Shown here: one piece after another, positions 12,342 through 41,124 of the stretch
Position numbering within the stretch: position 1 is the stretch's first letter
Layout of the letters: each line of letters opens with the position of its first letter
Assembly: GCF_037042905.1 (NCBI RefSeq)
Contig: NC_087253.1
Coordinates: 11,966,001-12,030,000, forward strand
Origin: Lytechinus pictus
Lineage: Eukaryota
DNA length: 64,000 nucleotides
Reading direction: 5' to 3'
Notes under the pieces: generated by a model
Told to the model about the DNA's origin: nothing
The model's database searches: none
The model's input: the letters and a program-made list of their open reading frames with translations, nothing else
Position numbers and translations under genes: made by a program

Positions 12342-12659
12342 TCTGCAGGGGCATCCCCCGGCCATGCCCCATTGGTCATTTTGGTGCCACGATTGGTTGG
12401 TTGGTGTTGGAGTTAAGTTGGCGCTCTTCAATCTGGTAGATTATCTGCGCCAGGTCGTTTCCGAGTTAGTTGCTTAATTCCCGCATCAATGTCCTCGACG
12501 TTAGACTAGTCTGACCTGTTATATAGCGAGGTGCAATATAATTATGATTAGTTACCACCACCATTAAATTGTGCGTTTTTGTACTTCATAGTATGCAAAC
12601 TTATATAAGAAGCTAGGTCGAAGCTCGATCAATTTTAGTAGTCTAAGAATTATCACTAA

Positions 12660-13420
12660 TCATCAGAACAAAAGGAAGAGAGAGAGAGAAAGAGATGGAG
12701 AGAGATCAGTGGAATATTCTTATTCGAATCTCTTTGTTTTTTCACATAATTCAGGATGACTTTATAATCTGCATTTCTTCCCAATAATGTTGCTAGATCT
12801 GATATTGGCTTGTTTAATTTCAGGCTTCTTTGCATAATTCTTCTTTCTCTTTCATATTTCTTACATTGTAGTAAAAAATGTTCTATTGTCTCAGGAACCT
12901 GACAATGGGAACATAGACCATTTTCATGTTGATTACATTTATACAGATAATAATTCAATTTACATTTTCCGAGTCTTAAACGGTGTATCATAGTCTCTTC
13001 AAACCGAATGAGACCTTGATAACTAATTGTATCTGCCACGTTGGGTTGGATGCTAAATAAATGTCTTCCTTTAGATGAGGTTACCCATTGAGCCTGCCAG
13101 ATTTCTTTATAAATCAAAGACATGTGGGTTTTCCATTCCTCTTTGATATATGGAATGTTTAATTCAACTTGTTCTTTTGATGCTCCTTTTTTTTGCTAAA
13201 AGGTCTGCCACATCGTTCCCGTGAATACCACAATGGGATGGTATCCATTCAAAATTGACATAAATATCTGATGATTGTAAAACTTTGATTTTATACAAGA
13301 TATCGACAATAAGATTGTTTTGTATACGATTGCTTTCAAGTGCTTGAAGAGCAGACAACGAATCTGTAAAAATTACAACGGACATACCTCTGTTATCTCC
13401 TAGCCAATCAAGTGCCATTA
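12660..13420 (-). mobile_element. 5'-truncated I/Nimb-clade non-LTR retrotransposon fragment (RNase H plus C-terminal CCHC knuckle)
   Basis: VIFTDSLSALQAL...FEWIPSHCGIHGNDVADLLAK (RNase H), then after a frameshift HRLRLG...CSHCQVPETIEHFLLQC. Confidence 0.88.
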
Positions 13421-13920
13421 TATTACCATTGCTGTTAATTCGGCTCTCATTATACTTACAGAATTTAATTGGGCCAAAGCATATTAACCTTAATTGTTTT
13501 CCCCCTTATATTATGACGAGGGCCTACCAAGGAAACTCCGAGGGGGTACCCCGATAAAGCTGTTCGTTAATTAGACATTATTCAATTTATGCACGACTGC
13601 ATGATTACCCTATCACCCTATCCTGCACTATAGATGATAATCACATGCGTGATGAGCCAAATATTTTGAATTATGTTTGAAAATTATGCAAGTGAACAAA
13701 ACCTAGGCCTTTTAAAATCCACAAGTGTAATTTTGCGATAGATTTTGACATAATATTCAGAAAATAGTATCATATTTCACTAATTTACCTTTCCTTTTCG
13801 GCTTCGTTCCCCCCCCCCCCCCTTTCCCCCATCTATTATACTCCAGTGATGAAAATCCCTATGTAGCTGACATAGCACCTTAAAGTAAAATGCTACAGTC
13901 GTTCGAAAATTCATGCTTAA

Positions 13921-14749
13921 AGAAAAGTCCACCCTAATAAAAAATTTACTTAAAAGAGAGAATTCCAACAAGCATGACACTGAAAATTTCAACAAAATCG
14001 GATGTAAGATAAGAAAGTTATGCTTTTAAAGTTTTGCTTAATCTAAGAAAAAATCCTGTTCTCCTGTTCGGTATGCGAAAGGGGGAACTGATGACATCAT
14101 CAACTCACTGTTTCAATTTTCTCCTCCTTGACAGGGGCGGATCCAGGATTTTCCAAAAGGGGGGCCAATTTTTCGGAGGAAAATTTTGACAAGCAAAAAA
14201 AAAAAATTTTAAACCACAAATTAAGGATATTTCCTACCCGAAGATTTTAGACAAGCAAAAAAAATAAGAAAAAAGGCTTCAATTTCAAAAGACGGGGCAC
14301 ACCTCTGTTTTAATGGCATTTTTACATTACAAATGTTAATTTTGCTTCTCAAAAGGAGGGGGCATGTGCCCGCTGTGCCCCCCCCCCCCCTGGATCCGCC
14401 AGTGTTCTTTGAACATGTGGTATTACCATTGTTTCGGGCATTGTTTTGATGTTTGGTGGTTCAGCAAAGTTGGTCATTAATTCTTGTCCAAGTAAAAATT
14501 TAAATATTGTATATTTCAAACAATAAAAAAAAAAAAAGAAACAGCTAGTGAGTGAGGCACGTCATCGACTCTCTCATTTGCAGAACATAAGTTGTGCATA
14601 ATCGTACTTGTTTTGTGGATAAGTGAATTAAAAAAAAAAGTCATAACTTTGTTATTTTACATCCGATTTTGATGAATTTGTTAGTGTTATGCTTGTTTGA
14701 TCTTTCTCTATTGATTCAAATCAGCATTTTTCTGGACTGGACTTGACCT
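13921..14749. mobile_element. Kolobok-like element (same family as 2960-3562) with a nested hAT-like MITE at ~14132-14404
   Basis: TTAA flanks; shared AAAATCGGATGTAA...AAGAAAGTTATG arms; nested TIR CAGGGGCGGATCCAGG/CCTGGATCCGCCAGTG. Confidence 0.75.
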
Positions 14750-15035
14750 TTAACTTTACGAACAAAACACGCACCATTCGGTATAGTTTCACAGAAGAAT
14801 TAGGAGTTTATAAATGTGTCAAAATGTGTTTGGTTCTTGTCTAAAGATAATCATAGTAAAATATCTTAAACGATTTCATATTTTGGGGTATGCCTAATGG
14901 CTATATACTGTTATCTAACCCGAGTTTGTACAACCCAGAGTATGCTATTTTATCATAAATCATATATATATATATATATATGTATATACATACATATATA
15001 CAGACATTATGCTTGTATAGTGATTTGCTTGCCAT

Positions 15036-15320: not shown

Positions 15321-15352
15321 TGATCGGAAAACAAGTGATCGAATTAAGCTAG

Positions 15353-16335
15353 CCCTTACAAAAAATTCCTGTAGTACTCTGTGATATGTACTGCAGGAAG
15401 TATCGCAGGAAAGTACTGCAGGAATTACGTGCACGTAATTTGGGACGGTACTACAGAAATGTACAACAGGAGTACAACAGGTCCGTGTCCTGTGATACTT
15501 CCTGTGGTAATAACCGCATAAGTATGGCAGGAAGTATGACAGGACACGATCACCACAACCGCTACAACCGCTACAACCACTACCACACTACTATTAGTAC
15601 TACAGGACAGTATCACAGGATAGTATCACAGGATAGTATCACATGATAGTATGACAGGACAGTATGACAGGATAGTATGACAGGACAGTATGACAGGACA
15701 GTACTACAGGAATACCGCAGACCAGTATCACAGGGAAGTACTACAGAACAGTATCGCAGGACAGTACTACAGGAGTACCGCAGGCTTCTGGTACTGTGTC
15801 CTGTAGTACTGTCCTGTGATACTGGTCTGGTATTCCTGTAGTACTGTCCTGTGATACTGGTCTGGTATTCCTGTAGTACTGTCCTGTGATACTGGTCTGG
15901 TATTCCTGTAGTACTGTCCTGTGATACTGGTCTGGTATTCCTGTAGTACTGTCCTGTGATACTATCCTGTGGTGATAAATAGTATCACAGGACAGTATGA
16001 CAGGACAGTACTTTAGGAATTCCGCAGACCAGTATCACAGGAAAGTACTACAGAACAGTACTGCAGGAATACCAAGAGACCTTACCGCAGGACAATTCCT
16101 GCAGTACTGTCCTGTGGTATTCCTGTGATACTGATCTTTGATATCTTCTGTGGCATTATTGGTCTCATCCTGCAGCCTTCTTGTGATACTTTACTGTGGT
16201 AATCCTGCAGGGGTATTCTTGTTGATTTCCTGTGACAATCCTATGGTATTGTCCTGTAGTAGTCTGTGCGATTTTCTCACGACACCGTCCTGCACTGGTT
16301 TGTTAGGCGTAGTAGTTTGTAAGAATTTCCTGTGA
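15353..16335. repeat. Left subterminal repeat array of the large element (13-bp and 35-bp tandem units, both orientations)
   Basis: CAGTATGACAGGA-type 13-mers at ~15590-15720; CTGTAGTACTGTCCTGTGATACTGGTCTGGTATTC repeated with a 35-bp period at 15801, 15836, 15871, 15906 and 15941 (partial). Confidence 0.9.
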
Positions 16336-18252
16336 TCCAGCACAACAACTTTGACATCTTGACTAATGAAAAGAGGCATGAAAAAACCCACAAATTTGCA
16401 AAGACGTTAAAAGCATATTCACATACCTTTATTATGTATGAGCTGTACTATGCACAGTATAGAACATCTTTGATATCATAAATGACTGCTAGAATAATGC
16501 AGTAACATTTCATCTTTAGGATAAGACATGTACAAAGATTTATATCCATGAACATTGAGATGCCACATGAACTACTTTCACTATTCATACATTGCTGCCA
16601 TTTTGAGATCACATAAAGAAAGCTAGATTCGACCCAGAATCCTTCCCTCTAACACAACAATAAGCGATTATTATTAATACCTTGGTCACATTCCTTGACC
16701 GGTTGCCTTACGGCGAGACAAAATCAGCAGTTTTAGGTATTCCTGTACAAACCACCCACGTGTAGCTGGTAGTAGCTGGTACAAGGATGATTAAGACTGT
16801 TAATTTTGACTCGACGTAAGGCCACGAGCCGGCGAATGTAACCAAGGCTTAACCAGTATTATGGTTGCAAAAAAAACTGTAATAGCTGAGCAATTGCATT
16901 TTCCCCTTCTTGTCAACACCCGATTGGCTTAATACTAAAAGCAGAACATCCTTTACTCAACCATGTTATGAAACAATGGATAACCACTTCTGCATGTACA
17001 GATAATGCATGGTGCACATACAGTAAGGGATGAAATTATGATGTGTTGATCACCAGTATAAACTTAAAGTACATGAACGTAATCATAATCACTTCATTTT
17101 GCTCAGAATTCACTTAAGTCCATAAATACTGAAAGATATTTTTGAATGAATTTCACATGATTTAGAACGTTCACCATAGGTTAGAAAAAATATGAACATA
17201 AGATTACTTTGCCAAAACGTAGATCAAATCTATTGAGACATTAACCTTTTTGACATTGAATAGGCATATCATTTTACACAGTCCTCTTGTCTAAGAATTG
17301 CTCCAACTACGTATTGAAGGGTTATATATGAATGTAAGCATGAGCCCATCATAAACACGAAATTGCGGCATGTAATTTGATTTGCTACATGTCATAATTG
17401 ATAACTAAATGACGTTCAATACTTGATGTTGCTACATAAAATAATTAAGGTCATGTGGCAATGTGAATTCATACCTACTCGAGTCATTTAGTAATTTCAA
17501 TTAGTATATGACCTAATTAATTATGACATATAGCTCAAAATTGACTTGAATAATTATGACCAATTTGATTGACCTCAATTATTTGAAGTAGCAACATCAA
17601 TTATTTAACATAAGCACTCTCAATCGAGGTGGAGTAACTCTTCTTTAGGTCATGTTACTATTCGAATTGGAACATGTCATTGTTTAGGTCATGCAGCAAT
17701 TCAAATTACTTGCTCAAGTAAACAATTACAATTGTAATATCACGCAAAATGAATTAGCTGTACATGACATAATTCTGTTCTTTGATGGGCTTATGCTTCC
17801 ATATATTAAGTAAATGGCTTTAATTCTTAATGATTATCCAAAAATTCATATACATAAAATAAACCAATATGAAGAGCATCATATCCAAAGTGATCACCAG
17901 TTCACCCAATGTTACAGTACAAAAATAAAAAGCTGATTTTCTTATGTACTTTCACACATGTTATACATGTGCACTGTATGTCACTTGACCCTGGCAGACA
18001 ATAGAATTGACAAGCAGTGAGTCCTACATGTACATGTAGCTGCCTGGTTTGCATACTTTAATGTTATATGAATTTCAATCATGGCCATGTGCTGTTTATA
18101 CACTAAATGGAGGGATCTTGTCATAATGTTATGTCAATTAAAAACTGAATAAAATCCCAATTATCCTGAATAGCTAGACTAGCCCCCTTGCAATGGACAT
18201 TGTAATCTTGTTTTCTTTTACCTTTCATTATTTTTGAAAATTTTCATACAAC

Positions 18253-19179
18253 TAGGGCTGGGACTAAAACCCGGGTACCCGAGTAGAAAAATCAATACCC
18301 GATACCCGAAAATTGCTCACCAGTATAATGTACATGTATTTGATTTGTATTGCGTAGTGTAAGACATGATTGTAACTCATTACAAAAGTACACAAGCCTC
18401 ATTTTGAATTTCACCAATTACCCTCTAAATATCCATAAATATACAAGTTTTCAAGTGATGATGATGTGACCGAGATCGTTCAATCATCGCCATGTTTCTT
18501 TTGCAGCGCAGTGACGTCATCCAGCCACTGCGACGCAAACCAATTTATGAATGAAAATATAGTAAGCATGCGCATTGCAAGCCTCAGCCCCACGCAGTAT
18601 TACGTCAAAACAAGTCTGCAATACTCTGTCACCTCATACCAAAATCGACCTACGAAGCACCAGCCAATCACGTTCTTGTTACCATTTTTAGTTCATCATA
18701 AACCGAAAATGGGAACACGATCGTGATTGGCTGGCGCATTTGACGCTCCGAAACCCGGAAATCAATTGACTTTGTTCACGTAGCGATACAAACTCACGAA
18801 CACGATGTAATATCGATGCTACTTCGTAAGATTTTGACGGAAAAGCAAGAATAACAATTTGCTTACCTGTGCAGTATCGGTGAGAAAACCTTTTATAATT
18901 CATATGATATATAGGAAAGTGGAATTCTAGGTCGATTTTGGTACGAGGTGACAGAGTATTGAAACTTGTTTCGATGGAATACTGCGTGGGGCACGGGAGG
19001 CTTGCAATGCGCATGCTTACTATATTTTCATTCATAAATTGGCTTGCATCGCATTGGCTTGATGACGTCACCTATGGGGTTTTTCCACCAGTCATATTTC
19101 AAGTGACATGATTTTCAGGTACCCACCCGAAAATTACCACGGGTACCCGAAGAGAAAAAACCCGAAAGTCCCAGGCCTA
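18253..19179. mobile_element. hAT-type element nested in the large element, itself containing a foldback (18511-19071)
   Basis: TIR TAGGGCTGGGACT...AGTCCCAGGCCTA; 8-bp TSD CATACAAC (18245-18252 / 19180-19187); inner ~140-bp inverted arms starting GTGACGTCATC. Confidence 0.88.
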
Positions 19180-20635
19180 CATACAACTCTTTGTTTTTTT
19201 TTATACTTTATCAAAGCTTTTATGATTGTAAATGTAATTAAATAATTTGACTTGATAAATGTATATTACTGGTATACTAATTGTGAATTTTTAGCAAGAA
19301 ACAGTATTTGTGTTGGATTAATACATAAAAATGTTGCGAAATTTCGGAACAGCGTACCCAGGCATCACAAATTTGGTCTCAAAAGATGTGCAAGACTTGA
19401 AAGTAAAAAGGCAGCTAACAGCCTCCCAGTTATTAACCCTTAGTTAAATTGGACCAATTTGACCCCCCCCCTTCCAAAAATTTGGCGACCATGCTGTCGC
19501 ACAATTTTTTTAAAACATGCCTCTTTCTAGTCTTGTGCATCTTTTGAGACCAATCTTGTGTCACCCGGTACGTGGTTCTGTAATAACGTGACATTATGTA
19601 AGTACATGTCATACCAAAAATTGCTCAAAAACGTGATTTTGTGTACAAAGTCAATGCAATAGAGGAAAAAGTATGATTTTGTATTCTAATTACGCATAAA
19701 TTAGTATTATCACTTACTAACAATTTGCGTGAAATAATTTACAATTTAATTTTGTAAATTATGCCCTAGACAACCCATGTGCCAATGTTAGACGCGATTG
19801 TGCGGTCAAGATCTCAAGGAAGGGGGGGGGGCCCTGGAAACCCCCCCTCCCCCCTTCCCCGGCCATATCAACTCCCAAAATACCCTGGCTTTAGTTGACT
19901 TTCTGGCTCCTCTTGAGTAGTCACCATTCATTGGACAGCTTGTTTTTATCCAAGTCTGTATAGCACGAGGCAGCTTAATCTGTAGAAAAAAAAACACATA
20001 CCATTACGATAACATGAACAACATAAAAATACAAGAAATAAGGTGTTTTGCCCCCATCTAGATCTCTTTTCACAAGTACATATCTATCGGATAATGAGGT
20101 CCTTGCGGCTATCTCTCTTAGCATATTCTTGCTTATAAAAGCAAACTAAGCCGAAGAGTGACAAACAATTTATAATGCAAACAAATTGTCATAAGCACAT
20201 ATTGAAACTCTTTAATAAAACAATGAAGAATAAATCTACATCTTCTAACAAGGATTACACTGTATGCCACTGCATGAATACAATCTGCTTAATTTTGTAA
20301 TTATAATATCTACTGAAGTGAATGCCTATATAATCACCTTTTATGAACTCCAACCGTGTCTTGTACAAGAACATGGCCTTTTCTGTGTACACCTGTAGTA
20401 TCTTTCCCACATAATGCTGGACTTGCTGCTCGATCATCCAGAGATCCCTCTTTGAATCTTTAATGAAATGAAATGAATTTGAGTGACATAGTAAAATTTT
20501 ATTTGCAGGTTAATACAAATACATGATGTAATAAAAATACATGATAAAACTTCTTCATTTCCATATTTCAGTGTTACAATTCAGGTGCAAAGAGTCATAT
20601 TCTTTAATAATATTCAACATAAAATCAATGAAAAC

Positions 20636-21610
20636 TAGTGCTGTTGTCGATAGGCCTCATATCGACATTGATGTCGACATACGAAGGATTTTCAAAATTC
20701 CGACATGTCGACATGCACGCACCCACATCGACATGTAAACATAAAATAAAAAGGGGTCTAGCCTACAATCACGAGTGTAAAGATTAGCTGAAAAGTTAGA
20801 AGCATTTATCCACAGTAATTGGCGCGATTAAAAGGTTTATTCAGCTTAGCAGCGCATTAAATGAAAAAAGAATATCTGCGAGCTGTGCGGCAGTAGAAAT
20901 ACGTCAGTGCAGGGCCGGCCTGCCCGATCGAGCCGCCCTCGATATCCCGTTATAGCGAGAGTAGCATTCACCGTACCCATCCACGGAAATATGTACCCAT
21001 CGCGCGCTATTCACCGTGCTTGATAATACGTTGCTCCTCAATGCATTACTTTTCACATAAACGTGAGCAGCAGCGAACACGTGTTTTTGTCAAAGTTGTG
21101 ACTGCCGCAATTGAGCGCTTACTTCATATCACGAAGTCACAGAAAACTTCCCTTCATTCGTTTGGAGATCGCCGCGGAAGTGATACTGAAATTATCGGTC
21201 GATTTTCATTACTTTTCATTGTCAAATTGAGGAGCTTGCGTTTGCAGCAATGATCACTGTTGTAATTGGTGATTCTCAAATTGGCTACGAGTGTTATTGA
21301 GCAATGCTTTCGAAACCGGATCCTGGTACAAAAACTTGATTCTCCAGAAAAAAAATGTGGATTAAATCGGTGATTTTGGAAGCTCAATTCCCGAACTGAG
21401 CCTGTATTATATAGATCTAGTGTGGGGATATCACTCGTGTCAAGGTGAATATATTTGATTGAGAGTGTTGTTCCACGATCGAATGCTTTTTTTTTATGTT
21501 AGGGAGCCCAGGCTAAATTACGGTCCCTTTTTCATGTCGACATTGTCGATGTCGGGATTAATTTTTAAGCGACATGTCGACATGGATTTTTGTTCCCGAC
21601 AACAGCACTA
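20636..21610. mobile_element. hAT-type element nested in the large element
   Basis: TIR TAGTGCTGTTGTCG...CGACAACAGCACTA; 8-bp TSD ATGAAAAC; subterminal CGACATGTCG repeats. Confidence 0.9.
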
Positions 21611-22074
21611 ATGAAAACATTAAAAGTAGAGGAGCATTTTAACCTTACTCACAGTCTGTTATTGTCGCTAAAGTCTTTACAATAAGAAGATTGGGCACTT
21701 TGCCGACATCGCGTAATGCTTTGCATCGATTTACATGTATAATAGTCTTTGTGCCTAGTCTTTTCTATGTAGTGTCTTTAATATGTAGATAAAACATGCG
21801 TCCTTTAGCTAGTTAGACGAACAATTTTGGAAATTAAAGACGGATCCATATTTTATCAACCGGAAGAGAAATTAGTGCTTAAATGAAGCTATTTGAGGGA
21901 TATTGATGATATTTAGGGTGAATTGACTTCACATCTTTTCGTAAGTTTGTCATGTTCATAGAAGGCCGGACTTGATTTTATAGAAACCTCTTTTAAATTT
22001 GTGGGATTGCCTACCTCGAGTGAAGTTTGTGCAGGCTCCACTCCACTTCACTATTGCTACACTACGCTCCACCT

Positions 22075-22619
22075 ACCCAAACTTTGAGACCGTGAACTGG
22101 ATCTGTCGATCTGATATTCCGAGTGACAAAAAGTGGGATCTTATGGGGGGGGGGATATCAAATTCATGCAACATCACGCTCTTTAAAAAAATTAAAACTA
22201 ATATTCTTCCTGCACACAAAGTTTCAGTTCTTCTCCATGCCTCTATCCGTCTCAAAATTGATGATTTAGAGCCAACATGAAGTTTCTCACACGTATCAAT
22301 ATTCAATACATCGCATGCGTGTGAGGTCGGTCGGGTCAGACCAGGCCCGGTATCTCGCGAATATTGCATCCGCATGCAATGTTTTGAAATCGGCAGCGAA
22401 TTATAAATATGTGTGAGGAACTTCATGTTGGCTCTAAATCACCAATTTTGAGACTGATAAAAGCGTGGAACTAAATGAAACTTTGTGTAAAGTAAGAATA
22501 TTAGTTTTAATTCTTTTTAAAAATCAAGATGTTGCATGAATTTTATATTCCCCACCCCCATAAAATCCCACCTCTGTCACTCGGAATATCAGATCGAGTT
22601 CATGGTCTCGAAGTTCGCG
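22075..22619. mobile_element. Foldback (long inverted repeat) element
   Basis: ~210-bp inverted arms (AACTTTGAGACCGTGAAC...GTTCATGGTCTCGAAGTT; GATTTAGAGCCAACATGAAGTT / AACTTCATGTTGGCTCTAAATC). Confidence 0.8.
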
Positions 22620-25600
22620 TCTGTAACGTTGGCGAAGAACAATAGAAAACAAGATGGCGGCGTAAACATCGGGCAAGTCTCTTCCGTCTAATCATGATAT
22701 TTTTCGCATTTTTTGGAATGAATTTCTTCTTCAAAAATAACGACGAGAGCGTAGAAATGTTGGAAATTAAGTTTTATCCCATGTACATGATTTAGGTCTA
22801 ACGTTAGGCTAGATCTTTTAGAAGGAAAGTAGAAATCTCGGGGCCGGGGGTGAAAGTTTCAAGTTTTGGCTTCCTCTGTGTGGGTATATGAGAAAGGATC
22901 CCTGGCTTCATATGAGAGTGACCTTACGAAGTTACGTTAGTAAATGATTTTCACTCTCTAGAAGCCGCCTGGCTAGGCCTACAGCCATTCCCGATCACGA
23001 TATTTTGAAAAGTGGTGGATATATTGACTTCAAATGTGACTGAGAGACTTGTCATGACATTTGGGAACAAATATTGGTGATGAGGTATGCTGGTATTAAT
23101 CGGCCGGTGCGAAACTGCATTAGCGCCCACCCCTGACCTTGCTACAATCATGACAATACAAACATCCTCACCGCCGCCATCAATATACTACTAACTTAGC
23201 CAGCCGTTGGCCGTCCCCGGCCGCGCACACCGCAGATCAGCCCCCACCCGATAAGCGATCGGGAACAACGGCAGTGCAGTGGCCGTACGGTAATGATTAA
23301 AAAGTCGAAGAAATTTAAGTGCATGCCGCGCCAAACTACGAAAAATGGATCTAACTTACTGTTTAGCCTGTTGTGTGAATGTCTTAAGAAGTCGTTGTCC
23401 GAATCTGATCCATATTCTGTTAGTTTTTGTTGAAATATTGACGGCCTTCTTCATCAAGCTTCGGGTTCAGCTGAGCAGTTACGAACGTTTTTTTTCAAAT
23501 GGCGGAACCGGAAACACGTATACGGTACAGTCCGTGCGCGCGTTTGTACGGGGAGCTCGGAGGGGGGGGGGGGGGGGGGGTCTTACTTTTTACTTGGCAA
23601 CCAGACAATTTGACTATTTTCGCCATCATTTATATATCATATTATTAACGTAAAGGAATTGAATAAAGTAAAATTCAAATATTTATTTCTTCTTCCTTTC
23701 TTTTTCTTTTCTATGTCTTTTAATTTTTTTCTTTCTCTTTATTCTTTTTTTTAATATGGATAGGATTTAAAAACATGTCTCACAATTTTACTGAAAATAT
23801 GTTATATAGGCCTACTAGTATGCAAGTAGGATGACAAAGAAAGCAATGAGGAAAATCACAGCTCCAATCCTATGTATTTTTAATTTTATTTCTTTTCAAA
23901 AACACACATTTTATCCTTTCTTGCGATCGAAGGAAAGATCCCTTTATAAGGTTCAAGTAGTAAAAGAAAATAATCTTAGATCAAGTGCCGGCAGGGTATT
24001 TTGATAAGGGGTGGAGGAGCAAGACAAGCAAATATAAAGATACCATTTTGAAGCGAAACATAAGAAAAGATAATAACTTTGCCAACGAGGTAAAAAATAA
24101 TATGATATCGGTTGTGACACTTTAAGGATGGAAAATAGTTTGAAAATATATAGATACAAACTTCATACAAATTAGAAAAAAAGAAGCAAAATAAACTGCC
24201 ATCATATGTGAACAGAGATACAAGATTGTTCTTGCAATTAAAAAACATATTTACAAACTATATATAGCTTCGCATCATAAAAATAGATTGAAAATATCCA
24301 AATTTATTTGATTTAAAAAGAAATAGATATAAACCAGCCTGGCTAACATATTGCAAGGTGGCAAAGATATAAACCGGGGATATAAAGCAAAAAATGGGCC
24401 TTAAAATGGAAATTAAATATCCTATTTTTAGTTTATCCTATTCCACCTGTAAAAAATATTGTGAATAGGAGAACAAATATTGAAGTAATTTTATTTATAA
24501 TAATATATTTGTAAGAAAATAGGTCCTTTTTACAAAAAAAATAAAATAAAAAAATAGATGGGAAACTTGGAAAAATGTATTTTCTCGCAATAAAAACTTT
24601 AAGGGGCCAGAATCGCATTAAAACTTGGTTATGAAACGTGTAAAACAAAATCTTAGATAGCATTTTAACTGAGATTTATTTTTTAATCAACATTCAACGC
24701 TGAACTTTCTTATGTTAATTGTTTATCAATATTTTGTGAAAACAGATAGTGTGCACATCGTCATGAATATTCATTTGGTGGGCTGATGATGTGACATTCC
24801 CATTTTTCTTTTTTAATGTTAGATATGAAATTATGATTATCTATTTTTTCAATACATGTGTAAATAATGTGTCCCCATTGTAAAGTTGCTGCATTAAATA
24901 ACTAATGCGGTTAATTAGTCGTCATTCCAATTGTTTAAGTTCTTGGTAGAAATATGTTGAATAAATCTAATTTCATATATTGTACAAAAGAACATGGGAT
25001 ATGACATCATCAGCCCACCTAATGAATATTCATGAGACATGCCTAAATAAAACTGTTTCATGGGAATATTGCAAATCCTTAAAATTCAACTTAACTTCGT
25101 TATTTGTCATCCGATTTTGAATAAATTTTAAGCATTTTGTTTTGTGAATTTTACTCTATTTATTGATTATCTCTAGCGTTGACCTCCCCTTCAATTATTT
25201 TCTTGTATTGTTAGAAAGAGATGGATGAAGTAGAATAATACGTTCATGCTTATATTTTTATTCATTACAATATCTCTTTGAAATTCAACCCGGCTTCCTC
25301 ACAACCATTAAGCTCTAAGAGTGTTAGGTGTGTCCTGTATATTTCAACACGTACCCTTTTAAATATAGTCATTTTTTTATTATTCATCCTGTTTTTTATG
25401 AAAAATAAGTGGCGAACAAACAAAACAAAAATGATAATTGAAATTTAAAAGAGCGCATGAAAAAGAAATAACCCTGAAAACGAACAATAGTCCTCAAAAT
25501 ATAAGTTGCCCATTTTGGGGTCAATAATTTTTCGCATTTTTCAGTTCGCGCTTTGCTCCTAGTTTTGATCTAGTACGTATAGTACCCTTTCTCGTAGAAA

Positions 25601-25889
25601 TAGAAGCTATCAAACTTAAAACCTCTGAGTCTCAGTAGGCATAACCCCCCCCCCCCTCGCTGATATAGACCTACACAATGGGACAGGGTGAAATATAATT
25701 TTGAAATAGGGCCTATATGTCACAATCTAGCTATCACAAAATTAAATTTTCATATAAAAAATTGTACTTTTTAAAATGAATGGTGCCCTTTTAAGCCATA
25801 TGGCCTTCTAAAAATATAAGACTCAATACGCTACTGACCTCTCCCGAAACTGAAAAAAAAGATAAATCCCTCACTGGAAATAAAAAAAT

Positions 25890-27033
25890 TAGTCTGTGGT
25901 ACAAACAGGGCTTCCATACAAGTACTGAAGGAAACTAATTTTTTCATGTACTGTACCACAGAAAATACACCAGTATAGCGTCTGTGATACACTTTCAGTC
26001 ATATTTCTGGGGTGGCTGCATGAGAAGTACCGCAGGAAATTTTGAAAGTATAGCACTGGGGTTGCCATAGAATTTTAGAAGTGCCTATATTGAGTCCTGC
26101 AGGAAATTTCAAAATTTTCATTTACCACAGAAGTATCACAGGGTTTTCATAGAAGTGTCTTTAATAGGATCGAGTACTGCAGGAAATTTCAAAATGTTCA
26201 TGTACCACAGAAGTATCACAGGGTTTCCATAGAAGTGCTTAGTAATAGGAGTACTGCAGGAAATTTAAAAAATGTTCATATACAACAGAAGTATCGCAGG
26301 GTTGTCATAGAAGTACTGCAGGATATTTTAGAATTTTCATGTACAACAGAAGTACGACATAACTATCACAGAGTGATATTGTATACAGTTATGTACAACA
26401 GAAGTATTACACAGGTACGACAGAGTACCATTAAGGTATTGCATGAAATTTTCATATTTTTACGTACAGAAGTAGAACTATCACAGAGTGATACCACAGG
26501 AGTCCTGTAGTAATTCCTTATACAGTTTTGTACAACAGAAGTATCACACAGGTACGACAGAGTACCATTAAGGTATTGCATGAAATTTTCATATTTTTAT
26601 GTACCACAGAAGTATGACAGAACTATCACAGAGTGATACCACAGAAGTCCTGTTGTAATTCTATATACAGTTTTGTACAACAGCAGTATCACACAGGTAC
26701 GACAGAGTACCATTAAGGTATTGCATGAAATTTTCATATTTTCCTGTACCACAGAAGTATGACAGAACTATCACAGAGTGATACCACAGAAGTCCTGTTG
26801 TAATTCTATATACAGTTTTGTACAACAGAAGTATCACACAGGTACGACAGAGTACCATTAAGGTATTGCAGGAAATTTTCATATTTTCCTGTACCACAGA
26901 AGTATGACAGAACTATCACAGAGTGATACCACAGAAGTCCTGTGGTAATTCTGAGGTACCGTCGTGTATGACAGAAGTATCACACAGGTACAACAGAGTA
27001 CCACTAAAGTACTGCAGGAATTTTTTGTAAGGG
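25890..27033. repeat. Right subterminal repeat array (145-bp tandem unit plus shorter ~65-bp units)
   Basis: A unit starting TACAACAG(A/C)AGTATCACACAGGTACGACAGAGTACC recurs at 26531, 26676 and 26821 (period 145), with a shorter copy at 26394. It uses the same core motif as the left array. Confidence 0.9.
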
Positions 27034-27559
27034 AGGGGCAGCGACAATTAATAAGATTATGAGTTTTATGCCCGGTCCCCCATGCACCACCCCCCCCCCC
27101 CCCAACTTCGGCTCAGCCACCATCCTCAATCTCAAAATCGGAGAGGCCTATTAAAAAATTCGGCTTGGTTTTTTTTTGTATGGTAATTTCTAACTGGGGG
27201 GCAACAATTAAGTATCCTAACAAAATTGACAAAAACGGATCTGGCTCATTACCCCACTAAACAGAAGTCAGTCGCAGTGATATACGTTTCATTAAAGGAC
27301 TTGTCTGATGTTTTATCCGACAAGTCCTGTTCTCAGCCAATCAAAATCAAGGAATTTGTCAGATCTGACAATTATCATGATTATATTGTCAGACAAAAAT
27401 TAATGTTAAACGCTGCATGCATTGGCCATGCATGCAGCTCGGACGTCGGATTAATCTTCTTCTTCTTCTGGAAACAGTGCAGTCCACCGTCTGGTGTATT
27501 GTCGTACTAATCGAGAGCTATAGGACTGCCACAGTCAGCTATAAAAGGTAAAAAGAGAA

Positions 27560-27843
27560 TAACCCAAATATTCGGCAACCCCGCCCTGAGGTCATCTAAG
27601 GTCATCCCGATGCGGGTTGTATTTGCGCGCACTGTGCTTATAGTGAACTTTGACCTTTGTAAACGCACACACATTTTCTTCCGTGCAGCTTGCACAATAC
27701 ATGATACACAATAGGCGGAACTAAGGTGATGACTGCGAAATCGGACAATGTTTTTTCACGAATAGCAGATTGGAGCAGATAGAGACCTTGAATTTTTAAA
27801 AGAAGGAGTTGATGCCAACGAGAAAGTGTTACTGGAATGCACG
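27560..27843 (+). promoter_or_regulatory. Probable UBE2M promoter/5' region with a DR1-type nuclear receptor element
   Basis: CpG-containing segment just upstream of the ATG; TGAACT-T-TGACCT at 27644-27656 (AGGTCA-A-AGTTCA on minus); GC-box-like CCCCGCCC at ~27579. Confidence 0.5.
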
Positions 27844-30800
27844 ATGATTAAATTGTTTTCCTTGAAAAAGCAGGCCGAAGCTGCCGCAGATCGGTCGGAC
27901 GGAGACGGGAAGAGAGCGTCCGCTGCACAGCTGCGACTGCAGAAAGGTGATGTCGAATTGAATGAATGAAATGAAATGAGTGCGTGATCAGCTGAATTGA
28001 ATGTCCATCGCTTTGCTGTTCTGTCTTCGCTTGAATGTTTTTATGACATACTGAACCGTCAAAAAGAAATACCTTCTGAAATTGAAATAAAGTAAATCTA
28101 AATTGATGATTATGAATATGATATAACATTGGAATGCCATGTCAATCAATGATTCAGAATTTCACAAACCTGTTCATTATTATTGATTAGGGGTCTACTC
28201 TAGTATAAAGTATAATAAATTGTCAAATTTCTCAAAATAATGAGGAAATATTTAACTAAAATTAAAAGTAAAAAGAATAAAAATCCAGCCCAAGGCCAGG
28301 TGAGAGTTTCTTAAAGCTGTTTGTAAAATGTAAGTTAAGAGCAACTTTAAGTTTAAGAATAGACAGCAGGCAGCCGTCTGTTTCGAGGAGTTTTTTAACA
28401 TTTTTTTATTTTTTAAATTTCTCCTCATACACAGACGGCTCGCTATCGTGCAGCCACCATCAGGGGACTTACAATGCAAAATCCCCCCGTCGGGGCTCTT
28501 CAATTTTTGTCTTTAATGAATCAATTTTTTGAAAATTAACGCTACCGAAATGCAAATTAATATTCCCTCTTGGCATTAATTGCCAAAAAAGGGGGAAAAT
28601 CAAGTTAAAAGGAACAAAAACAGTGACTTACCTCGGCTGTCGCGCAACTTCACTGCCCTGTTTTATCCGAACTTTATACACATAAACATATGGTCATTGA
28701 GTCCCCTGTACAGATCGCGCTAGAACTTCGGTCTCTGTATTTGGTGAGTGAAGCCAACGGAGTTCAGCTGAACAACCAACATAACAGAGACCGAAGCTTT
28801 TGGTCTACTTTAAGAACAATTGAATTGGTGAACCTTTCTTACCTGCAAAATTATTAATCACAGTTAGAGGGTGAGATCGGTTTGTATTGTCGAATTGTAT
28901 TTATCTATGAACCTTCAGGCGCCTAATGCATATAAAGTGATAAAAATTATTTCACTATAAATGGTAAAAATGAGACGTTTCTTACCAGACCCGATCTCCC
29001 GTAGATCCCTCGATCCATTTGTCGACAAAGCAAAGACAATAGACCTGACCCTTGAATCGCTTCGTGATGACGTACTTCCGACTAGCGATGCCGTTTTGAA
29101 GAACAATGTATAGATAAAAATTATTATTTCACAAATACTAAAATTTATTACGTGATTATAAATAATAACAATACTGCTAATTAAAAATAAATCATGTGTT
29201 AAATTGTAGTATTTGTGAAATGATAATTTTTATCTATAAATTGTTCTTCAAAATGGCTTCGCTAATCGGAAGTACGTCATACATAAGCGGTTCAAGGGTC
29301 GACGCTATTGTATTTGCATTGTGTACATGTGGATCGAGGGATCTACACGACATCAGTCTGGTAAGAAACCTTCATTTTTTTTACATTTTTAGGGACCATT
29401 TTTTAAAACCTTCCTTCGCATTAGGCGTAGGAAGGTGTAGAAATGAATAAAATCAACATATTTTACGTGATTCTTTTATGAAAAGATGGATTTCCTAGGG
29501 AAATCCATCTTTGTTTACCTGGGTCTCATATACATATATGGGCGGGGGTTCAAGACTCCAATGATGAAGAAGTATATGTCAAAGGATTTTAAAAAGACAT
29601 CATCATGGAGTCCTCAAGACTAGATTAAACTACCTTTTTAAATTCGGGCCACTATTTTCATTAAGCTTGAACATAATCTTGTTTTAAAAACAGAATGTGA
29701 AGTTGGTGTAATATTTCTTATTTGTTTTTTTTTTCTCTGTCATGCTCAGATCTTGGGGAGCTGAATCTACCAAAGACATGTCAGATAGATTTCCCTGATC
29801 CTGATGATTTACTTGTTTTCAAACTAGCCATACAGCCAGATGAAGTAAGTGTTTATATTCAATTCTTATATCGGAAACCTTCCTCACATTTGAAAAAATC
29901 AAAACTGGTCACATCTGCATTGATCTTCACTTGTTAATTTGTTACATTCAGGTGGAATTACCCATAGGCCTGTATTCTGAACCTGGACAAAATGCCCATA
30001 TTGCCCCCCCCAAAAAAAAAAAAATTGTTATAGTCTCGCACAATATTTTTAGTATGCAAGTCCAACATTCCATGCAACTTCTTTTTCTAGCTAAAATATA
30101 TGATCGTTTCTTTGACTGCATAGAAACAAGTTTATCAACTATAAATATCAGACATATTTTTTTATGTTAAGGCCACCGCACACCTTGCGATTGGTCTGCG
30201 ACTCAATTTTGGAATAAAACGTAGTAGAATTTGATGCTTATATTGAGACTTGGAATATCTTACTGCGTAATGTTTGAAATCATCGTACGAATCCCTATGT
30301 TCAAATCTGTGACTATGCTAACATCCTTCTTAGAATAAAAGCAAATTTTATATCTAGTCGTAGTGACGTCATAGCAGTCGTACGATTGGCTACGATTTGA
30401 AACTAATTTGGCATTTACTCTAAAATAAAGGCTTACAATCTTACAAAATGGTTAGGCTATATTAGTATTCTTTCAATTAATTTTAACCTCAAATAAAATG
30501 ATATGTTCTATTCACATTTTCAGAAAATTAGCAATATGCGATATGTTCCGAAATCGGATCGTGTTCGGTGGCCTTTACATGTACATCCCCCTTGGCAGTA
30601 TGTTGCACAACAATTTTGTTCCTTCACACGAGGGGGTAATTTTGAAAGGGGGGGATTTCAAGTCCAGAGTTGGTGTTGAAAGCACACTTTGGATTGCGTT
30701 TACTAGCCCCCAAAACCTATTCTGAGTTTACACAATTAATGCCGAATTGCCGATCACAATATTGACTGCTCAACACCTAGTGAGTGACTTTTCAGGACCA

Positions 30801-33800
30801 TCTTCATTTTATGTTTGGAGCAACAACAACAAAAATACACGGTGGCGACGGGCGATTCGCCCCCAAAATCTCTGAAATTGCAAAGGTATAAACCAAAGAC
30901 GAGGGTGAAAAAACCCACATATACTGAAAAATCACCCCATCATAAATTGATGTTTCCTAAACTGTCTAAGTGAAATCTCTTTTTTAGCAACAACCTCCAA
31001 AACTATAAACTTCCATCAACATTCCAAAAGAAAAGAAAGTTTCTTTGACTCAAATTGCAAGCCAGTTTGTTTGCGCTATTTTCTTTGATTGACACACAGA
31101 CACACACAAAGTCAGTAGCAAACTGCAAGGTTATACTAGCAGCCCAGCCAGCTCAGTTAGCTACACATGTAGCAAGGTTAAGGCCACGTGCGCACAGCTA
31201 ATGGTTCTACACTAATACCAGTAGTACTGCTAAGCTTAGGGCGCTTTTCAAAAGTCTGGCTCTGTGAACCTCCACAAAACTGTCAAAATTCACATTTCAC
31301 ACCTATGAAATGCTCTTCTAATGTCCAAATTTCCTTAAAAATTTGGTGTAACTCACTTGCAAGCAGTATAGGGAAATATTATCAACTTCTGTTATAGCTT
31401 AAAAAGATGGAGTTACGATGATATCGTCTGTATCAACACACATTGGTGAGAGTATGTTACAGTCCCATGTATGCATTTGTGTGTGTGTTGATAAGTTACT
31501 TGTCTTTTCTTTATTTTCTCTCTTCATTCTATCCTTTCTTTTTTTTTCCCTCATCTTTTTCCCATACTTTTCTTCATTTTTCTATTCATTCTTTCTACTC
31601 TAGTTTCTTTCCTTTTTTCTTTTACCTTTTTCTTTCCTACTTTCATTCTATTCTCTTTTTCTTTCCTTTCTTTTCCCCCCTATTTTCTCCCCTACATTAT
31701 TCTGTTTGTTCCTTTTTTCTTTCCTGCATTCCTTCATTCTATTCATTCATTCTTTTATTTTTTTTATTTTCTTCCTTTCTTTCCTTCGTTTTATTTCTTT
31801 ATTTTCTCTCTTCTTTCTTTCCTTACTTCCCCCCCCCCTCACCTTTCTTCCATACTTTCCTTCATTTTTTCTTTAGTTTCTTTCTATCCTCACTTTTCTT
31901 TTCCTTTTTTCTTTCCTACTTTCATTCATTCTTCTATTTTTTTTCTTTCAGACTCCATCCTTTTATTCCTCCTTTCTTTCTTTCATCATTTTATTTTTAT
32001 TTTAGAAAACTCACTTTTCATGCCTGCATTTAATAAGTATTACATAAATAAGTGATCATGGGTGTCTGAAACTCTAAATGTCTGCAATGATCTACATGTA
32101 GACTATTATGTTTGACTTTGCTTGAAATTTAAAATTCTACACCCTTTAAAAAAGAACCCCCATGAGCTCCAAAATAGCCACTACAAATATATTAACGGTG
32201 GGTATTTTTTCAGGGGGGGGTAGTCTACAAATGTAGACCCACATCTGCAGTGTGTGTACCACAGCTGATTCAATGAGTCTGCATAGCAGACTAGGTCGAC
32301 TCTACTGTGAATTGGCTCGCTTCGCTCGCCCTTTCAGGCTGGTTTGCTTTGCAAACCAGCAGCAGCACGCGCTGAGATCGCACCTCACGAGCCATTCAGA
32401 GTCGACTAGGGGGGATCTAAAAATAGCCCTCGTAAAAAGAAAAGTTATTTTTTGGTTGGTTTGGAGTTATACTCCTGCCAAAATTGACCAAACACCAAAG
32501 CCAAAGTATCAACACATTTGAAATCACCAATGGTCATAGATATTTCAGACAGCATTTCCAGTGTGCATATGCGTAATGTTAACCTTTATGAATGACATTT
32601 TTTTTTCTCACAGTCCTGAATAAATATTTTGTTGTTGTTGTTAATGGTCTGTTTCTGAAACTGTTATTCTTTTTTTCCTTTCCCCTTTTCTATTCAGGGC
32701 TTTTACAGAAATGGTAGATTTGTTTTTGGTTTTAAGGTAAGTGTGATTTCAGAAATTATGCATTAAAGAATCTAGCATAAACTCTGATCAGAGAATTCAG
32801 AACCACAAGGTTTAAAAATATTAAGTCTTATGATACAGGAACTATTTTATGAACCAAACATTTTGTTGAAAATAATAAGTGGAAATTAAACATTCAGGTC
32901 AACTGACAAAGTGACATGACAAAATGACAGGCAAAGTAATGATTCTACCAAATGGTTATTAGACAAAATTGATATTAGACTAAGTGGGTTTAGCCATTAT
33001 GGTGTTAGACAATCTGAGAATTATGGGTTTAGCCATGATGGTGTCTAGCAGTCTGAGCAAATAGAACATCTACATACAACTATTAGACCAAGTTGGTTTA
33101 ACCATTGAGGTGTTAAATGATCTGAGAAGTATATTACAATTTGCTAGTAGACCAAGTGGGTTTAGCCATGATGGTGTTAGGTGGTCTGAGCATTAGACCA
33201 GCTACTATTAGACCAAGTGGATCTGGCCATGATTGTGTTACTAAGATATGAGAATTAGACCTGGGGCCTGTTGCTGAAAGAGTTGCGATTAAATACAACA
33301 CCAAAATCAAATCTTATGTAATCAAAATACTTGTTAAATTGTTATGCGACTAACCGCGGAATCGCCCAAGCAAATGTTTATTACACTTTAAATGGAAATG
33401 AATGTATGCTTATGTATGCCATTAACAATTTGTCTTTTATATTTTCTCTGTTAGGTATCACCGAACTACCCCCATGAACCTCCTAAAGTCAAATGTGAAA
33501 CAATGGTATACCATCCGAACATCGACTTAGAAGGAAATGTGTGTCTCAATATACTTAGGTAAGAACGAAGTGAAAGAGAGAGGAAAACATAGAGAAAGGA
33601 GGGAGGGGTAGTACATGTATGCATGTAGGGAACTGGGTGGGTCAGGCCCCCCCAAAAATGTTTGCCATAACAGGAAGGAGCAGGCAAAAAAAAAACCCAA
33701 ATTTTTGGAGGCTACTTTTTACAACCTACTGCCTAAATCTGAAACATTGGATACAGTGCAGTGAGTGAATATTATTCTGAGTAACAGAAAAATAAGCTCC

Positions 33801-39218: not shown

Positions 39219-41124
39219 AACAATGATGGACTTCCATACAGTTGAGGACTTGAGGTTGATCAGATCAATAACTCTTTGTAAGACAAGAGCCCAGATGTGC
39301 AAGCTCCTTCCAACACCCTATTAACATAAAATGAGGAACTCGACAACATCAAAGAATATCAGCACGAAATGATGATATTCCTCTGTGCTTTATACATCAG
39401 TGATGTCCCCAAGCCATTGCATATATCTAGTGGGAGTTTGAGAGAAAATCCTTTTTTGTTTTATTATTATTTTGTGTGTTAATGGCACTATTAAGGCCTG
39501 TTAGGATATGACTTGATGAGCTCTGTCTGCTGGGCTAATAAGATGAGTCGGGGTGATAATATCCAAGTACCTTTGAAGTGCATCTAGGGACATTACTGTA
39601 CATGTATATCAGAATGTGATATGCGCTATATAAGAACTGAGTATTATATTTGTGATTGTATTAACAAGTGTGAACGTAGAGACTTCCTATTTTATTAAGG
39701 CAGTCATGAACGTATGCACATCAAAGGCATCTTGGGGCCAGTTTCAGAAAAGGTTGTGATCAAAGGCAACTTGATTTACAACCAATCGTGAATGTGCAGG
39801 GCTTGATGGGTATATTTCAAGTTGCATTGAAATGCAAGCCTGTCTACACCAGGACTCCATAACACAAAGATTAGCGATGAATAGCAAATATGAGAGACCA
39901 CTTCTGATTGGTTCCTGGTCAGTATTTTGTGTCAAATGCGCATGTAATGTTGATCTTGATTGGTCAGTTCATTTAGCAATTGATCGCTAATCTTTGTGTT
40001 GCGAAGCCCTGGAGGAGAATACGCCTGCAGTTAGCAATATCACTGTTCATGCCCCTTTGAAAATTACAGGTTTAAGTATTTGGCAGCGAGACAAAACCAG
40101 AATGTAAAATTATATAAGTAGCTTTGGTATATTTCATTGATTTGCCATAAATTTCAATTCAACTTTTAGTTTTTAACAAAGAAATTACAAAAGAATGCAG
40201 TTACTGAGGGATATATGAATAATTTGTTAACATGTCCCTTTTTAACCTTACATGTACACACTCATCTGTTTTTATTTTTATTTTTTTTGTTTAATTGGGT
40301 TTATCACGTCATATCCAACAGGTGTGAGCTGTACTTCAATTCTCATCGTGTGTATAAGATGAATGAGGTCCAGTCTTGTGGTTATATATTTGTGGAAAGC
40401 ATGTATTTAGCTTCTCTGTATGTAATGATACTAGTCAAGATTTTTGTAATATTAACTTAAAAATGTGAAAAGAAAATGAGAGAAAAAAAAATTGTACATT
40501 TTATGAAGGGATGTTAACAGATGCTAATAAAGGTACAGTATTCAAATTGTTTGTATGAAATTATTTTTTTATGGCATGTGCTGTGTACTGTACATGAACA
40601 TACTGATACAAGGAACATTCCAACTCTTGACTAGAATATTGATGATGAGGTTCTGGGTAGCGATACTAGTTATGGTGTTGGTGGTGGTGATGATGATGAT
40701 GGTAAATGTGGTTGGAGTGATCATGATGGTGGTGATATGATGCTGCTGCTATTAACAATTGTGGTCGTGATGGAGGTGATATTTAAAGAAAAACAATTTT
40801 TTTTTAATGGCATGTGCTGTGTACTATCCATGAATATACTAATAAAAGGAACATTCCAACTCTTGACTAGAATATTGATGAGGTTCTGGGTAGCGATACT
40901 AGTAGTTATGGTGGTGGTGATGATGATAATGATAAATGTGGTTGGAGTTATCATGATGGTGATATGATGCTGCTATTAACGACTGTGGTCGTGATGGAGG
41001 TGATATTTAAAGAAAAACAATTTTTCTTTTTTTAATGTCATGTGCTGTGTACTATACATAAATATACTAATACAAGGAACATTCCAACTCTTAATTGATG
41101 AGGCTCTGGGAAGCGGTACTAGTA

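What the first reader, a model, noticed from the sequence alone, without database searches (positions are those of the whole stretch)
15353..27033. 11.7-kb 'Pack'-like CACTA/CMC element with no transposase, carrying promoter-like and exon-like cargo between the UGT and UBE2M genes
Seen: 26-bp TIRs beginning CCC, a 2-bp AG TSD, ~1-kb subterminal arrays of one motif at both ends, no transposase ORF, and an interior with CpG-rich first-exon-like segments, spliceable exons and several nested MITEs. Known: short TIRs, 2-3-bp TSDs and repeated subterminal binding sites define the CACTA/CMC superfamily, and gene-fragment-carrying Pack elements are best described in plants. Inference: this may be an animal Pack-type element that mobilises host 5' ends or a non-coding gene. 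It ends only ~810 bp upstream of the UBE2M ATG.
Basis: partly seen in the sequence, partly recalled or inferred. Interest (0 to 1): 0.8.

Follow-up and report, generated by a model that had tools for sequence, protein, structure and literature searches.

The report
Fossil non-coding transposon beside UBE2M
This is a real but ordinary 11.7-kb dead "jumping gene" shell in a sea-urchin genome, with no enzyme gene of its own and many smaller transposons lodged inside it; nothing found supports the idea that it carries captured host gene starts.

Summary
The structure is real. A 26-nt inverted repeat (25/26) lies at 15353-15378 and 27008-27033, its only two copies in 64 kb. An 11-nt motif, GTAYNRCAGGA, occurs 40 times in the window, always within about 1 kb of these ends (0.28 expected). 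AG flanks both ends. No open frame exceeds 138 aa, and 41 pieces gave no Pfam match.

The interpretation mostly fails.
- The ends read CCC...GGG, not the CAC...GTG that defines CACTA/Chapaev/Mirage elements. The AG "duplication" is a 1-in-16 coincidence with no empty site to confirm it.
- The CpG-rich "promoter/exon-like cargo" is mostly nested repeats: two hAT-type MITEs with perfect 8-bp duplications, several hairpin elements and high-copy repeats, about 43% of the interior.
- RNA reads were absent from the unique interior tested.
- A DNA run with near-identical sequence shows that interior at single-contig depth, so no parental second copy is seen.
- A related species holds the same interior and subterminal sequence in several diverged variants.

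Best reading: an old, low-copy, non-autonomous transposon of unassigned superfamily, swollen by later insertions, ending 668 bp upstream of the UBE2M transcript start. Pack-type transposons in animals are already published. Interest is low.

The parts
15351..15352 (.). AG dinucleotide outside the left end; possible 2-bp target-site duplication
   Evidence: matches the AG at 27034-27035; chance 1/16; no empty site seen
15353..15378 (+). left terminal inverted repeat, CCCTTACAAAAAATTCCTGTAGTACT
   Evidence: one of only two matches in the window, 0 expected; extends the pairing to about 34 nt with one gap
15379..16260 (.). left subterminal arrays of the GTAYNRCAGGA motif in alternating + and - blocks; includes 13-bp x 13.5 and a 35-bp unit x 4.7 at 100% identity; can fold back on itself
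   Evidence: 34 strict motif hits at 15367-16131, on both strands
16680..16847 (.). small nested hairpin element with 76-nt arms, 72% complementary; accounts for the CpG-rich window near 16550-16850
17414..17609 (.). nested 196-bp inverted-repeat (MITE-like) element
   Evidence: 40-nt arms, 88%
18253..19179 (.). nested hAT-type MITE, ends TAGGGCTGGGACT / TAGGCCTGGGACT, perfect 8-bp duplication CATACAAC; carries the 18511-19071 element inside it
18511..19071 (.). 561-bp long-TIR element (146-nt arms, 90%) nested in the hAT MITE; CpG-rich, arms hold TGACGTCA and CCAAT-like words
19322..19604 (.). nested 283-bp inverted-repeat element
20636..21610 (.). nested 975-bp hAT-type MITE, ends TAGTGCTGTTGTCG (14/14), perfect 8-bp duplication ATGAAAAC, ATGTCGACAT-type subterminal words; holds the CpG-rich 20750-21500 block
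22080..22615 (.). nested 536-bp near-palindromic element with 200-nt arms
22621..23127 (.). high-copy repeat holding part of the CpG-rich block; word depth in the related species is 1,000-3,000 times single copy; contigs break at 23127
   Evidence: depth bins 22534-23133 and pieces 1, 2, 17
23134..24760 (.). interior with no recognised nested element; one contig in the matching DNA run, several diverged variants in the related species; no RNA on 23934-24533
24761..25035 (.). nested 275-bp MITE, very high copy and transcribed elsewhere in the genome
25047..25333 (.). fragment of a dispersed repeat also present at 2993-3529, 14644-14716 and 43768-43878
25960..27007 (+). right subterminal arrays: 80-bp unit x 2.8 and 145-bp unit x 4.5 (93%), motif always on the + strand; the outermost unit runs into the TIR, so the units carry TIR-like inner halves
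   Evidence: (families D2, D4, D7)
27008..27033 (-). right terminal inverted repeat, CCCTTACAAAAAATTCCTGCAGTACT on the - strand
27034..27035 (.). AG dinucleotide outside the right end
27701..27946 (+). UBE2M exon 1 (context, not part of the element); transcript contig begins at 27701, ATG at 27844
   Evidence: piece 8 (depth 135) and stranded reads

Best explanation
An old, low-copy, non-autonomous cut-and-paste DNA transposon of unassigned superfamily, 15353-27033 (11,681 bp). It would have been moved in trans by a transposase that recognises the 26-nt ends. That enzyme, or a partner DNA-binding protein, would also recognise the 11-nt GTAYNRCAGGA sites stacked in the roughly 1 kb inside each end. 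This mechanism is inferred by analogy with Ac/Ds and En/Spm-type elements.

Its interior is non-coding. About 43% of it consists of later insertions of other small transposons. The rest looks like the family's own filler, because a related species holds it in several diverged variants, as it does the subterminal sequence.

It is probably now immobile. It ends 668 bp upstream of the UBE2M transcript start, and no read-through from the element was seen.

Shown: ends, arrays, lack of coding capacity, nested elements, lack of RNA on the tested interior, lack of a second copy in the matching DNA run. Inferred: mobility in trans, age, the 2-bp duplication, and that the interior is shared family sequence.
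For: - TIR pair unique in the window, 0 expected.
- 40 of 40 strict motif hits confined to the two ends, 0.28 expected.
- No frame over 138 aa and no Pfam match in 41 pieces.
- Nested elements with their own ends, two with perfect 8-bp duplications.
- CpG-rich blocks coincide with those nested elements.
- Run X5 (DNA, near-identical to the window) covers 23150-24802 and 25019-26548 with one contig each at depth 7-11. Its bin depths equal that single contig, so it holds no second copy at 85% likeness or more.
- Run X8 (related species) gives four different contigs at 85-93% over 25832-26069 and 3-4 contigs over 24203-24272. Its summed depth is 2-13 times its UBE2M contigs.
- Raw RNA run X23 has zero reads on 23934-24533 and 25334-26533, while UBE2M exon 1 has depth 52.
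- The 1/26 TIR mismatch is compatible with an age near the roughly 4-5% divergence seen on UBE2M promoter contigs between the two species.
Against: - No empty site, no second full copy and no autonomous partner were obtained, so mobility as one unit and the 2-bp duplication are unproven.
- Only the right 4.5 kb of the element was laid on reads. The left interior (16400-22500) has no copy-number or RNA test.
- Single-copy depth of X5 could not be calibrated on the flank, because that stretch gave no contigs, probably through filtering.
- The several variants in the related species could be unrelated low-copy repeats rather than copies of this family.
- 'RNA?' runs X1-X4 hold 59-88% of the element's words. 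That could be low-level transcription rather than DNA carry-over.
Confidence: 0.6

Rival explanations
1. Two independent events. The left end and the right end are remnants of two separate, truncated copies of one family, or the two outer ends of a pair of copies. The 9.7 kb between them is ordinary intergenic DNA. If a transposase used the two outer ends, the pair could still move as a composite 'macro-transposon'.
For: - The interior carries nested repeats at about the density of ordinary spacer DNA: about 43%, against similar repeat loads in the flanks.
- Left and right subterminal regions share only the TIR and the 11-nt motif, with no longer block in common.
- The AG match is weak evidence (1/16).
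Against: - Only one left-type and one right-type TIR exist in the window, correctly inverted.
- The family is very low copy in the matching DNA run: right-array bins are 1-3 times the interior depth. Two truncated copies landing 11.7 kb apart in the right orientation with matching flanks is therefore unlikely.
- Asymmetric subterminal regions are normal for single elements.
Confidence: 0.17
2. True Pack-type element. The two ends flank host DNA (promoter or non-coding gene pieces) copied in by gap repair.
For: - No transposase, and a large non-array interior.
- One CpG-rich block, 23134-23560, is not inside a delineated nested element.
- A few minus-strand RNA reads fall on 23134-23533.
- Pack-TIRs do exist in animals (PMC8277862).
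Against: - No coding similarity in 41 pieces.
- Most CpG-rich blocks are nested hAT-type MITEs or repeats.
- The RNA reads on 23134-23533 carry other letters, so they may come from another copy or another allele rather than this exact sequence (table 3).
- There are no reads on the rest of the unique interior.
- Single-contig depth in X5 argues against a parental second copy for 23.1-26.1 kb.
- The related species has the interior in several variants, like the family's own ends.
Confidence: 0.08
3. Decayed autonomous element. The interior is what remains of the family's own transposase gene or genes, eroded beyond recognition and broken up by nested insertions.
For: - The size of 11.7 kb is typical of autonomous two-gene elements. 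First-stage notes report such elements elsewhere in this genome (unchecked).
- The interior appears to be shared by family variants in the related species.
Against: - No frame over 138 aa and no Pfam match even at E<=0.1-1.
- Three-frame reading of the least repetitive stretches shows stops every few dozen codons and nothing protein-like.
- The TIRs are still 25/26, so a coding region of the same age should still be detectable.
Confidence: 0.1

Closest known systems
Non-autonomous En/Spm (dSpm) and Ac/Ds-type elements: short TIRs plus arrays of a short protein-binding motif in both subterminal regions
   Same: A 26-nt TIR whose inner half is itself a copy of the motif. About 1 kb of 11-13-nt motif repeats inside each end, in both orientations at the left end. 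No transposase. These features imply mobilisation in trans.
   Different: Termini are CCC...GGG, not CACTA (En/Spm) or YAG with an 8-bp duplication (hAT). The flanks match over only 2 bp. No partner element is known. The arrays are unusually long and partly recent tandem expansions (35-bp x 4.7 at 100%).
Pack-TIR / Pack-MULE / Pack-CACTA elements (animals: Tan et al. 2021, PMC8277862)
   Same: TE ends on both sides of a large interior that lacks a transposase.
   Different: The defining internal sequence with a non-TE parental copy was not found. The interior is non-coding, rich in nested TEs, untranscribed where tested, and single-contig in the matching DNA run.
piggyBac superfamily termini
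   Same: 5'-CCCT...AGGG-3' terminal bases.
   Different: No TTAA at either junction. The flanks are GCTAG| and |AGGGG, and the nearest TTAA lie 5 and 14 bp away. Membership fails.
ISL2EU (PHIS) and Mirage (CMC), the groups with 2-bp duplications other than Tc1/mariner
   Same: A possible 2-bp duplication.
   Different: The ISL2EU duplication is typically AT (PMC4122938), and here it is AG. CMC termini are CAC...GTG (PMC4079192). The 2-bp figure for Mirage is from my own memory, not checked here.

Membership tests
CMC (CACTA/EnSpm, Mirage, Chapaev) | Invariant 5'-CAC...GTG-3' (CACTA-type) termini | tested here: not met
   Termini are CCCTTAC...GTAAGGG. Hallmark as stated in PMC4079192.
CMC (CACTA/EnSpm, Mirage, Chapaev) | Target-site duplication of 2-4 bp | tested here: inconclusive
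   AG on both sides, but the chance match is 1/16. No empty or paralogous site was found in the window, and none could be fetched.
CMC (CACTA/EnSpm, Mirage, Chapaev) | CMC-type DDE transposase in the element or in an autonomous partner with the same ends | not testable with these tools
   No coding capacity here. The rest of the genome cannot be searched. The TIR scan of metagenome contigs found 0.
CMC (CACTA/EnSpm, Mirage, Chapaev) | Repeated subterminal motifs (typical, not exclusive) | tested here: met
   40 of 40 strict motif hits lie within about 1 kb of the ends.
Pack-type TIR element (Pack-TIR) | TE terminal sequences on both sides and no transposase | tested here: met
Pack-type TIR element (Pack-TIR) | Internal sequence derived from a non-TE host locus, with a parental copy identifiable elsewhere (>=90% identity in PMC8277862) | tested here: not met
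   For 23.1-26.1 kb, the matching DNA run shows one contig at depth 7-11 and no extra depth. The CpG-rich blocks are nested TEs. 16400-22500 was not tested for copy number.
Pack-type TIR element (Pack-TIR) | Captured exon or gene fragments recognisable by protein similarity or transcription | tested here: not met
   No Pfam match in 41 pieces. No RNA reads or splice joints on the unique interior laid.
piggyBac | TTAA target-site duplication abutting CCC...GGG termini | tested here: not met
   Termini fit, but the flanks are CTAG| and |AGGG.
ISL2EU | 2-bp duplication, typically AT; THAP-DDE transposase and YqaJ gene in autonomous copies | tested here: inconclusive
   The 2-bp flank is AG, not AT (PMC4122938). 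The proteins are not testable.
hAT (for the nested elements 18253-19179 and 20636-21610 only) | 8-bp target-site duplication and short TIRs starting TAG/CAG | tested here: met
   Perfect 8-bp CATACAAC and ATGAAAAC duplications; TIRs TAGGSCTGGGACT and TAGTGCTGTTGTCG (for the second).

The most novel reading that the evidence does not exclude
The element is the first sighted member of an undescribed lineage of echinoderm cut-and-paste transposons, with CCC...GGG ends, a non-TA 2-bp duplication and kilobase arrays of an 11-nt binding motif. Its autonomous partner is still unknown. This copy may have carried about 5 kb of non-TE spacer DNA as a passenger.
Probability: 0.12. Interest if true: 0.45.

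Novelty: new member of a known kind. Interest (0 to 1): 0.2.

Why it matters
It matters little as it stands. This is one more fossil non-autonomous DNA transposon in a repeat-rich sea-urchin spacer. The case is useful as a caution: CpG-rich, promoter-looking blocks inside a large TIR element were nested MITEs, not captured host 5' ends.

If the combination of ends and duplication were confirmed genome-wide and tied to a transposase, it would add a family, possibly a new clade, to the echinoderm transposon catalogue. The element ends 668 bp from the UBE2M transcript start, but no read-through transcription from the element was seen.

Tried and rejected
1. Finding other family copies through spurious ORFs. 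The search for homologous proteins on the 138-aa array frame gave nothing. The look-up of encoding contigs on four window ORFs (UBE2M exon 1, its antisense ORF, an interior ORF, the left-end ORF) found none on record.
2. An exact TIR scan of JGI metagenome contigs gave 0 hits.
3. Fetching the orthologous locus through the full UBE2M protein. The six exons are each too short for the length filter, and a spliced protein has no reference, so I did not type it in.
4. A paralogous empty site in the window. The immediate flanks are unique and the joined flanks match nothing.
5. Rfam and tRNA scans of the whole window found nothing.
6. I first read the nested element at 20636-21610 as a true CACTA element. 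The end alignment showed TAG... ends and an 8-bp duplication, so it is hAT-type.
7. piggyBac was considered because of the CCCT ends and rejected for lack of TTAA.
8. A strict TIR+TSD scan of the interior recovered only the 20636-21610 element plus three low-complexity chance pairs.
9. The scan's notebook had no note with this TIR and no look-alike by sequence.
10. The search of protein representatives was not used. No interior frame looked protein-like enough to justify the single job.
Full report
**Observation**

The two ends are real. CCCTTACAAAAAATTCCTGYAGTACT occurs at 15353-15378 on the + strand and 27008-27033 on the - strand. It occurs nowhere else in the 64-kb window even at three mismatches, and none is expected in shuffles. 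The arms differ at one of 26 positions. With one gap the pairing extends to about 34 nt. Outward from the CCC/GGG ends the flanks are unrelated, except that both begin with AG.

Inside each end lies about 1 kb built from one short motif.
- The strict form GTAYNRCAGGA has 40 matches in the window. All are at 15367-16131 or 26027-27019, against 0.28 expected.
- A looser form gives 56 of 58 matches in the same two stretches.
- The left arrays alternate in orientation. They comprise 13-bp units x 13.5, then a 35-bp unit x 4.7 at 100% identity on the other strand, then two more flips. This end can fold back on itself.
- The right arrays are all in one orientation (80 bp x 2.8 and 145 bp x 4.5 at 93%).
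- The outermost right unit runs into the TIR, so the units carry TIR-like inner halves (families D2, D4, D7).

**Coding capacity**

No stop-free frame exceeds 138 aa, and the longest ones lie in the arrays. All 41 interior pieces of 55 aa or more were scanned against Pfam at E<=0.1 to 1. Only three sub-threshold noise hits appeared. Three-frame reading of the least repetitive stretches shows nothing protein-like. Rfam and tRNA scans of the window are empty. The element therefore carries no recognisable transposase.

**What the 'cargo' is**

The CpG-rich windows map almost one-to-one onto nested repeats.
- 16680-16847: a 76-nt-arm hairpin.
- 18253-19179: a hAT-type MITE with TAGGSCTGGGACT ends and a perfect 8-bp duplication, CATACAAC. 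It contains a 561-bp element with 146-nt arms at 18511-19071.
- 20636-21610: a 975-bp hAT-type MITE with 14/14 TAGTGCTGTTGTCG ends and a perfect 8-bp duplication, ATGAAAAC. It holds the strongest CpG block.
- 22080-22615: a near-palindrome with 200-nt arms.
- 22621-23127: a repeat whose summed word depth in the related species is three orders of magnitude above single copy. Contigs break at its edge.

Further nested elements lie at 17414-17609, 19322-19604, 24761-25035 and 25047-25333. Together these make about 4.15 kb of the 9.7-kb interior (43%). Only 23134-23560 is CpG-rich without a delineated element, and in the related species it too is present at 5-8 times single-copy depth.

**Reads**

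I laid 22534-28533 on four runs.

Run X5 (DNA) matches the window almost letter for letter.
- It covers 23150-24802 and 25019-26548 with one contig per place at depth 7-11.
- The bin depths equal those single contigs. That genome therefore holds no second copy at 85% or more of the interior tested or of the inner right array.
- The family is thus very low copy there, and a parental locus for that part of the 'cargo' is not seen.
- I could not calibrate X5's single-copy depth on the flank, because 27534-28133 gave no contigs. The tool warns that this can be filtering.

Run X8 is DNA of a related species. Its UBE2M promoter and exon 1 contigs are about 95-96% identical to the window at depth 28-30.
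- It gives four different contigs at 85-93% over 25832-26069.
- It gives three to four contigs over 24203-24272.
- Summed depth is 52-173 on 23934-24533 and 114-368 on 25334-26133.
- Both the subterminal sequence and this interior therefore exist there as several diverged variants. This is what a shared family interior predicts, though unrelated low-copy repeats are not excluded.

Raw stranded RNA (X23, about 6% of the run read) has zero reads on 23934-24533 and 25334-26533. UBE2M exon 1 has depth 52 on the expected strand.
- The few reads on 23134-23533 carry other letters than the window, so they may come from another copy or another allele.
- Most other reads are partial matches from dispersed repeats.

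'RNA?' contig runs of one study hold 59-88% of the element's words. In X3 the depth is a flat 7-12 over the interior and array, with 8.8 on the bin inside UBE2M intron 1, against 135 on the exon. I read that as DNA carry-over or unspliced background. This is not proven.

A transcript contig places UBE2M exon 1 at 27701-27946, so the element ends 668 bp upstream of the transcript start and 811 bp from the ATG.

**Classification**

- Chapaev-Mirage-CACTA: this group is defined by invariant CAC...GTG termini, with 3-4-bp duplications for Chapaev (PMC4079192). This element ends CCC...GGG, so that defining feature is tested and not met.
- piggyBac: CCC...GGG ends recall this superfamily, but there is no TTAA at either junction.
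- ISL2EU: it makes 2-bp duplications, typically AT (PMC4122938). Here the flank is AG.
- hAT, Mutator, P and PIF: their duplication lengths do not fit the flanks.

The superfamily is therefore unassigned. The 2-bp duplication itself rests on a 1-in-16 coincidence.

**Pack-type elements**

They are already described in animals: 370 young Pack-TIRs in 100 genomes, defined by TE ends plus an internal sequence with an identifiable parental copy (PMC8277862). That criterion is not met here where it could be tested.

**Best reading (about 0.6)**

This is an old, low-copy, non-autonomous TIR transposon. It was once mobilised in trans through its 26-nt ends and the stacked 11-nt sites. Its non-coding interior has since been swollen by at least nine nested insertions.

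The 1/26 TIR mismatch and the presence of related sequence in the sister species at about the divergence of the flanking promoter fit an insertion around or before the split of the two species. Orthology was not shown.

**Rivals**

- Two independent ends around ordinary spacer DNA, or a composite of two copies (0.17).
- A decayed autonomous element (0.10).
- A true Pack-type capture (0.08).

**Limits**

- No empty site, second copy or partner element could be fetched. The protein-based routes to other assemblies all failed, as did the metagenome scan.
- The single read-laying run covered only the right 4.5 kb of the element.
- According to earlier follow-up notes of this scan, the genome is the painted sea urchin, Lytechinus pictus. 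I did not verify that.
- The N runs at 41125-41622 and 42066-42550 were left alone.

Noticed in passing
window 27285-27371: A short, very high-copy and heavily transcribed repeat core lies 250 bp right of the element. RNA depth is about 90-165 on both strands. This copy lacks about 30 nt that most reads carry between 27327 and 27331. Related copies lie at 7149-7267 and 53044-53302.
   Followed up: partly
window 18511-19071: A 561-bp element with 146-nt arms (90%) whose arms hold TGACGTCA (CRE-like) and CCAAT-like words. It is CpG-rich and nested in a hAT-type MITE. It could pass for a bidirectional promoter by eye.
   Followed up: partly
window 15799-15963: A 35-bp unit repeated 4.7 times at 100% identity inside an otherwise old element. 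This points to recent slippage or conversion within the left array.
   Followed up: no
window 12656-13123 (-): A 155-aa ORF ending in a CxxC...HxxxC knuckle, typical of the C-terminus of a non-LTR retrotransposon ORF2. Probably a LINE fragment between the UGT gene and the element.
   Followed up: no
window 13914-14753, 2953-3566, 43731-44341, 50079-50332: A dispersed repeat family in both orientations. A fragment of it also sits inside the element at 25047-25164.
   Followed up: partly
window 40558-42660: A tandem-repeat region (139-300-nt units with an 8-nt sub-period) interrupted by two N runs (41125-41622 and 42066-42550).
   Followed up: no
window 23563-23581 and 27090-27105: Long G and C homopolymer runs (about 19 and 16 nt) inside the element and just outside its right end. 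Similar G/C-rich tracts occur at 19823-19860.
   Followed up: no
window 27844-35949 (+): UBE2M is split into six short exons (27844-27963, 29749-29844, 32695-32739, 33455-33556, 34907-34972, 35812-35949 by tblastn with a remembered human sequence used only as a locator). A low-complexity 196-aa S/F-rich frame lies in intron 2 at 31443-32033.
   Followed up: partly
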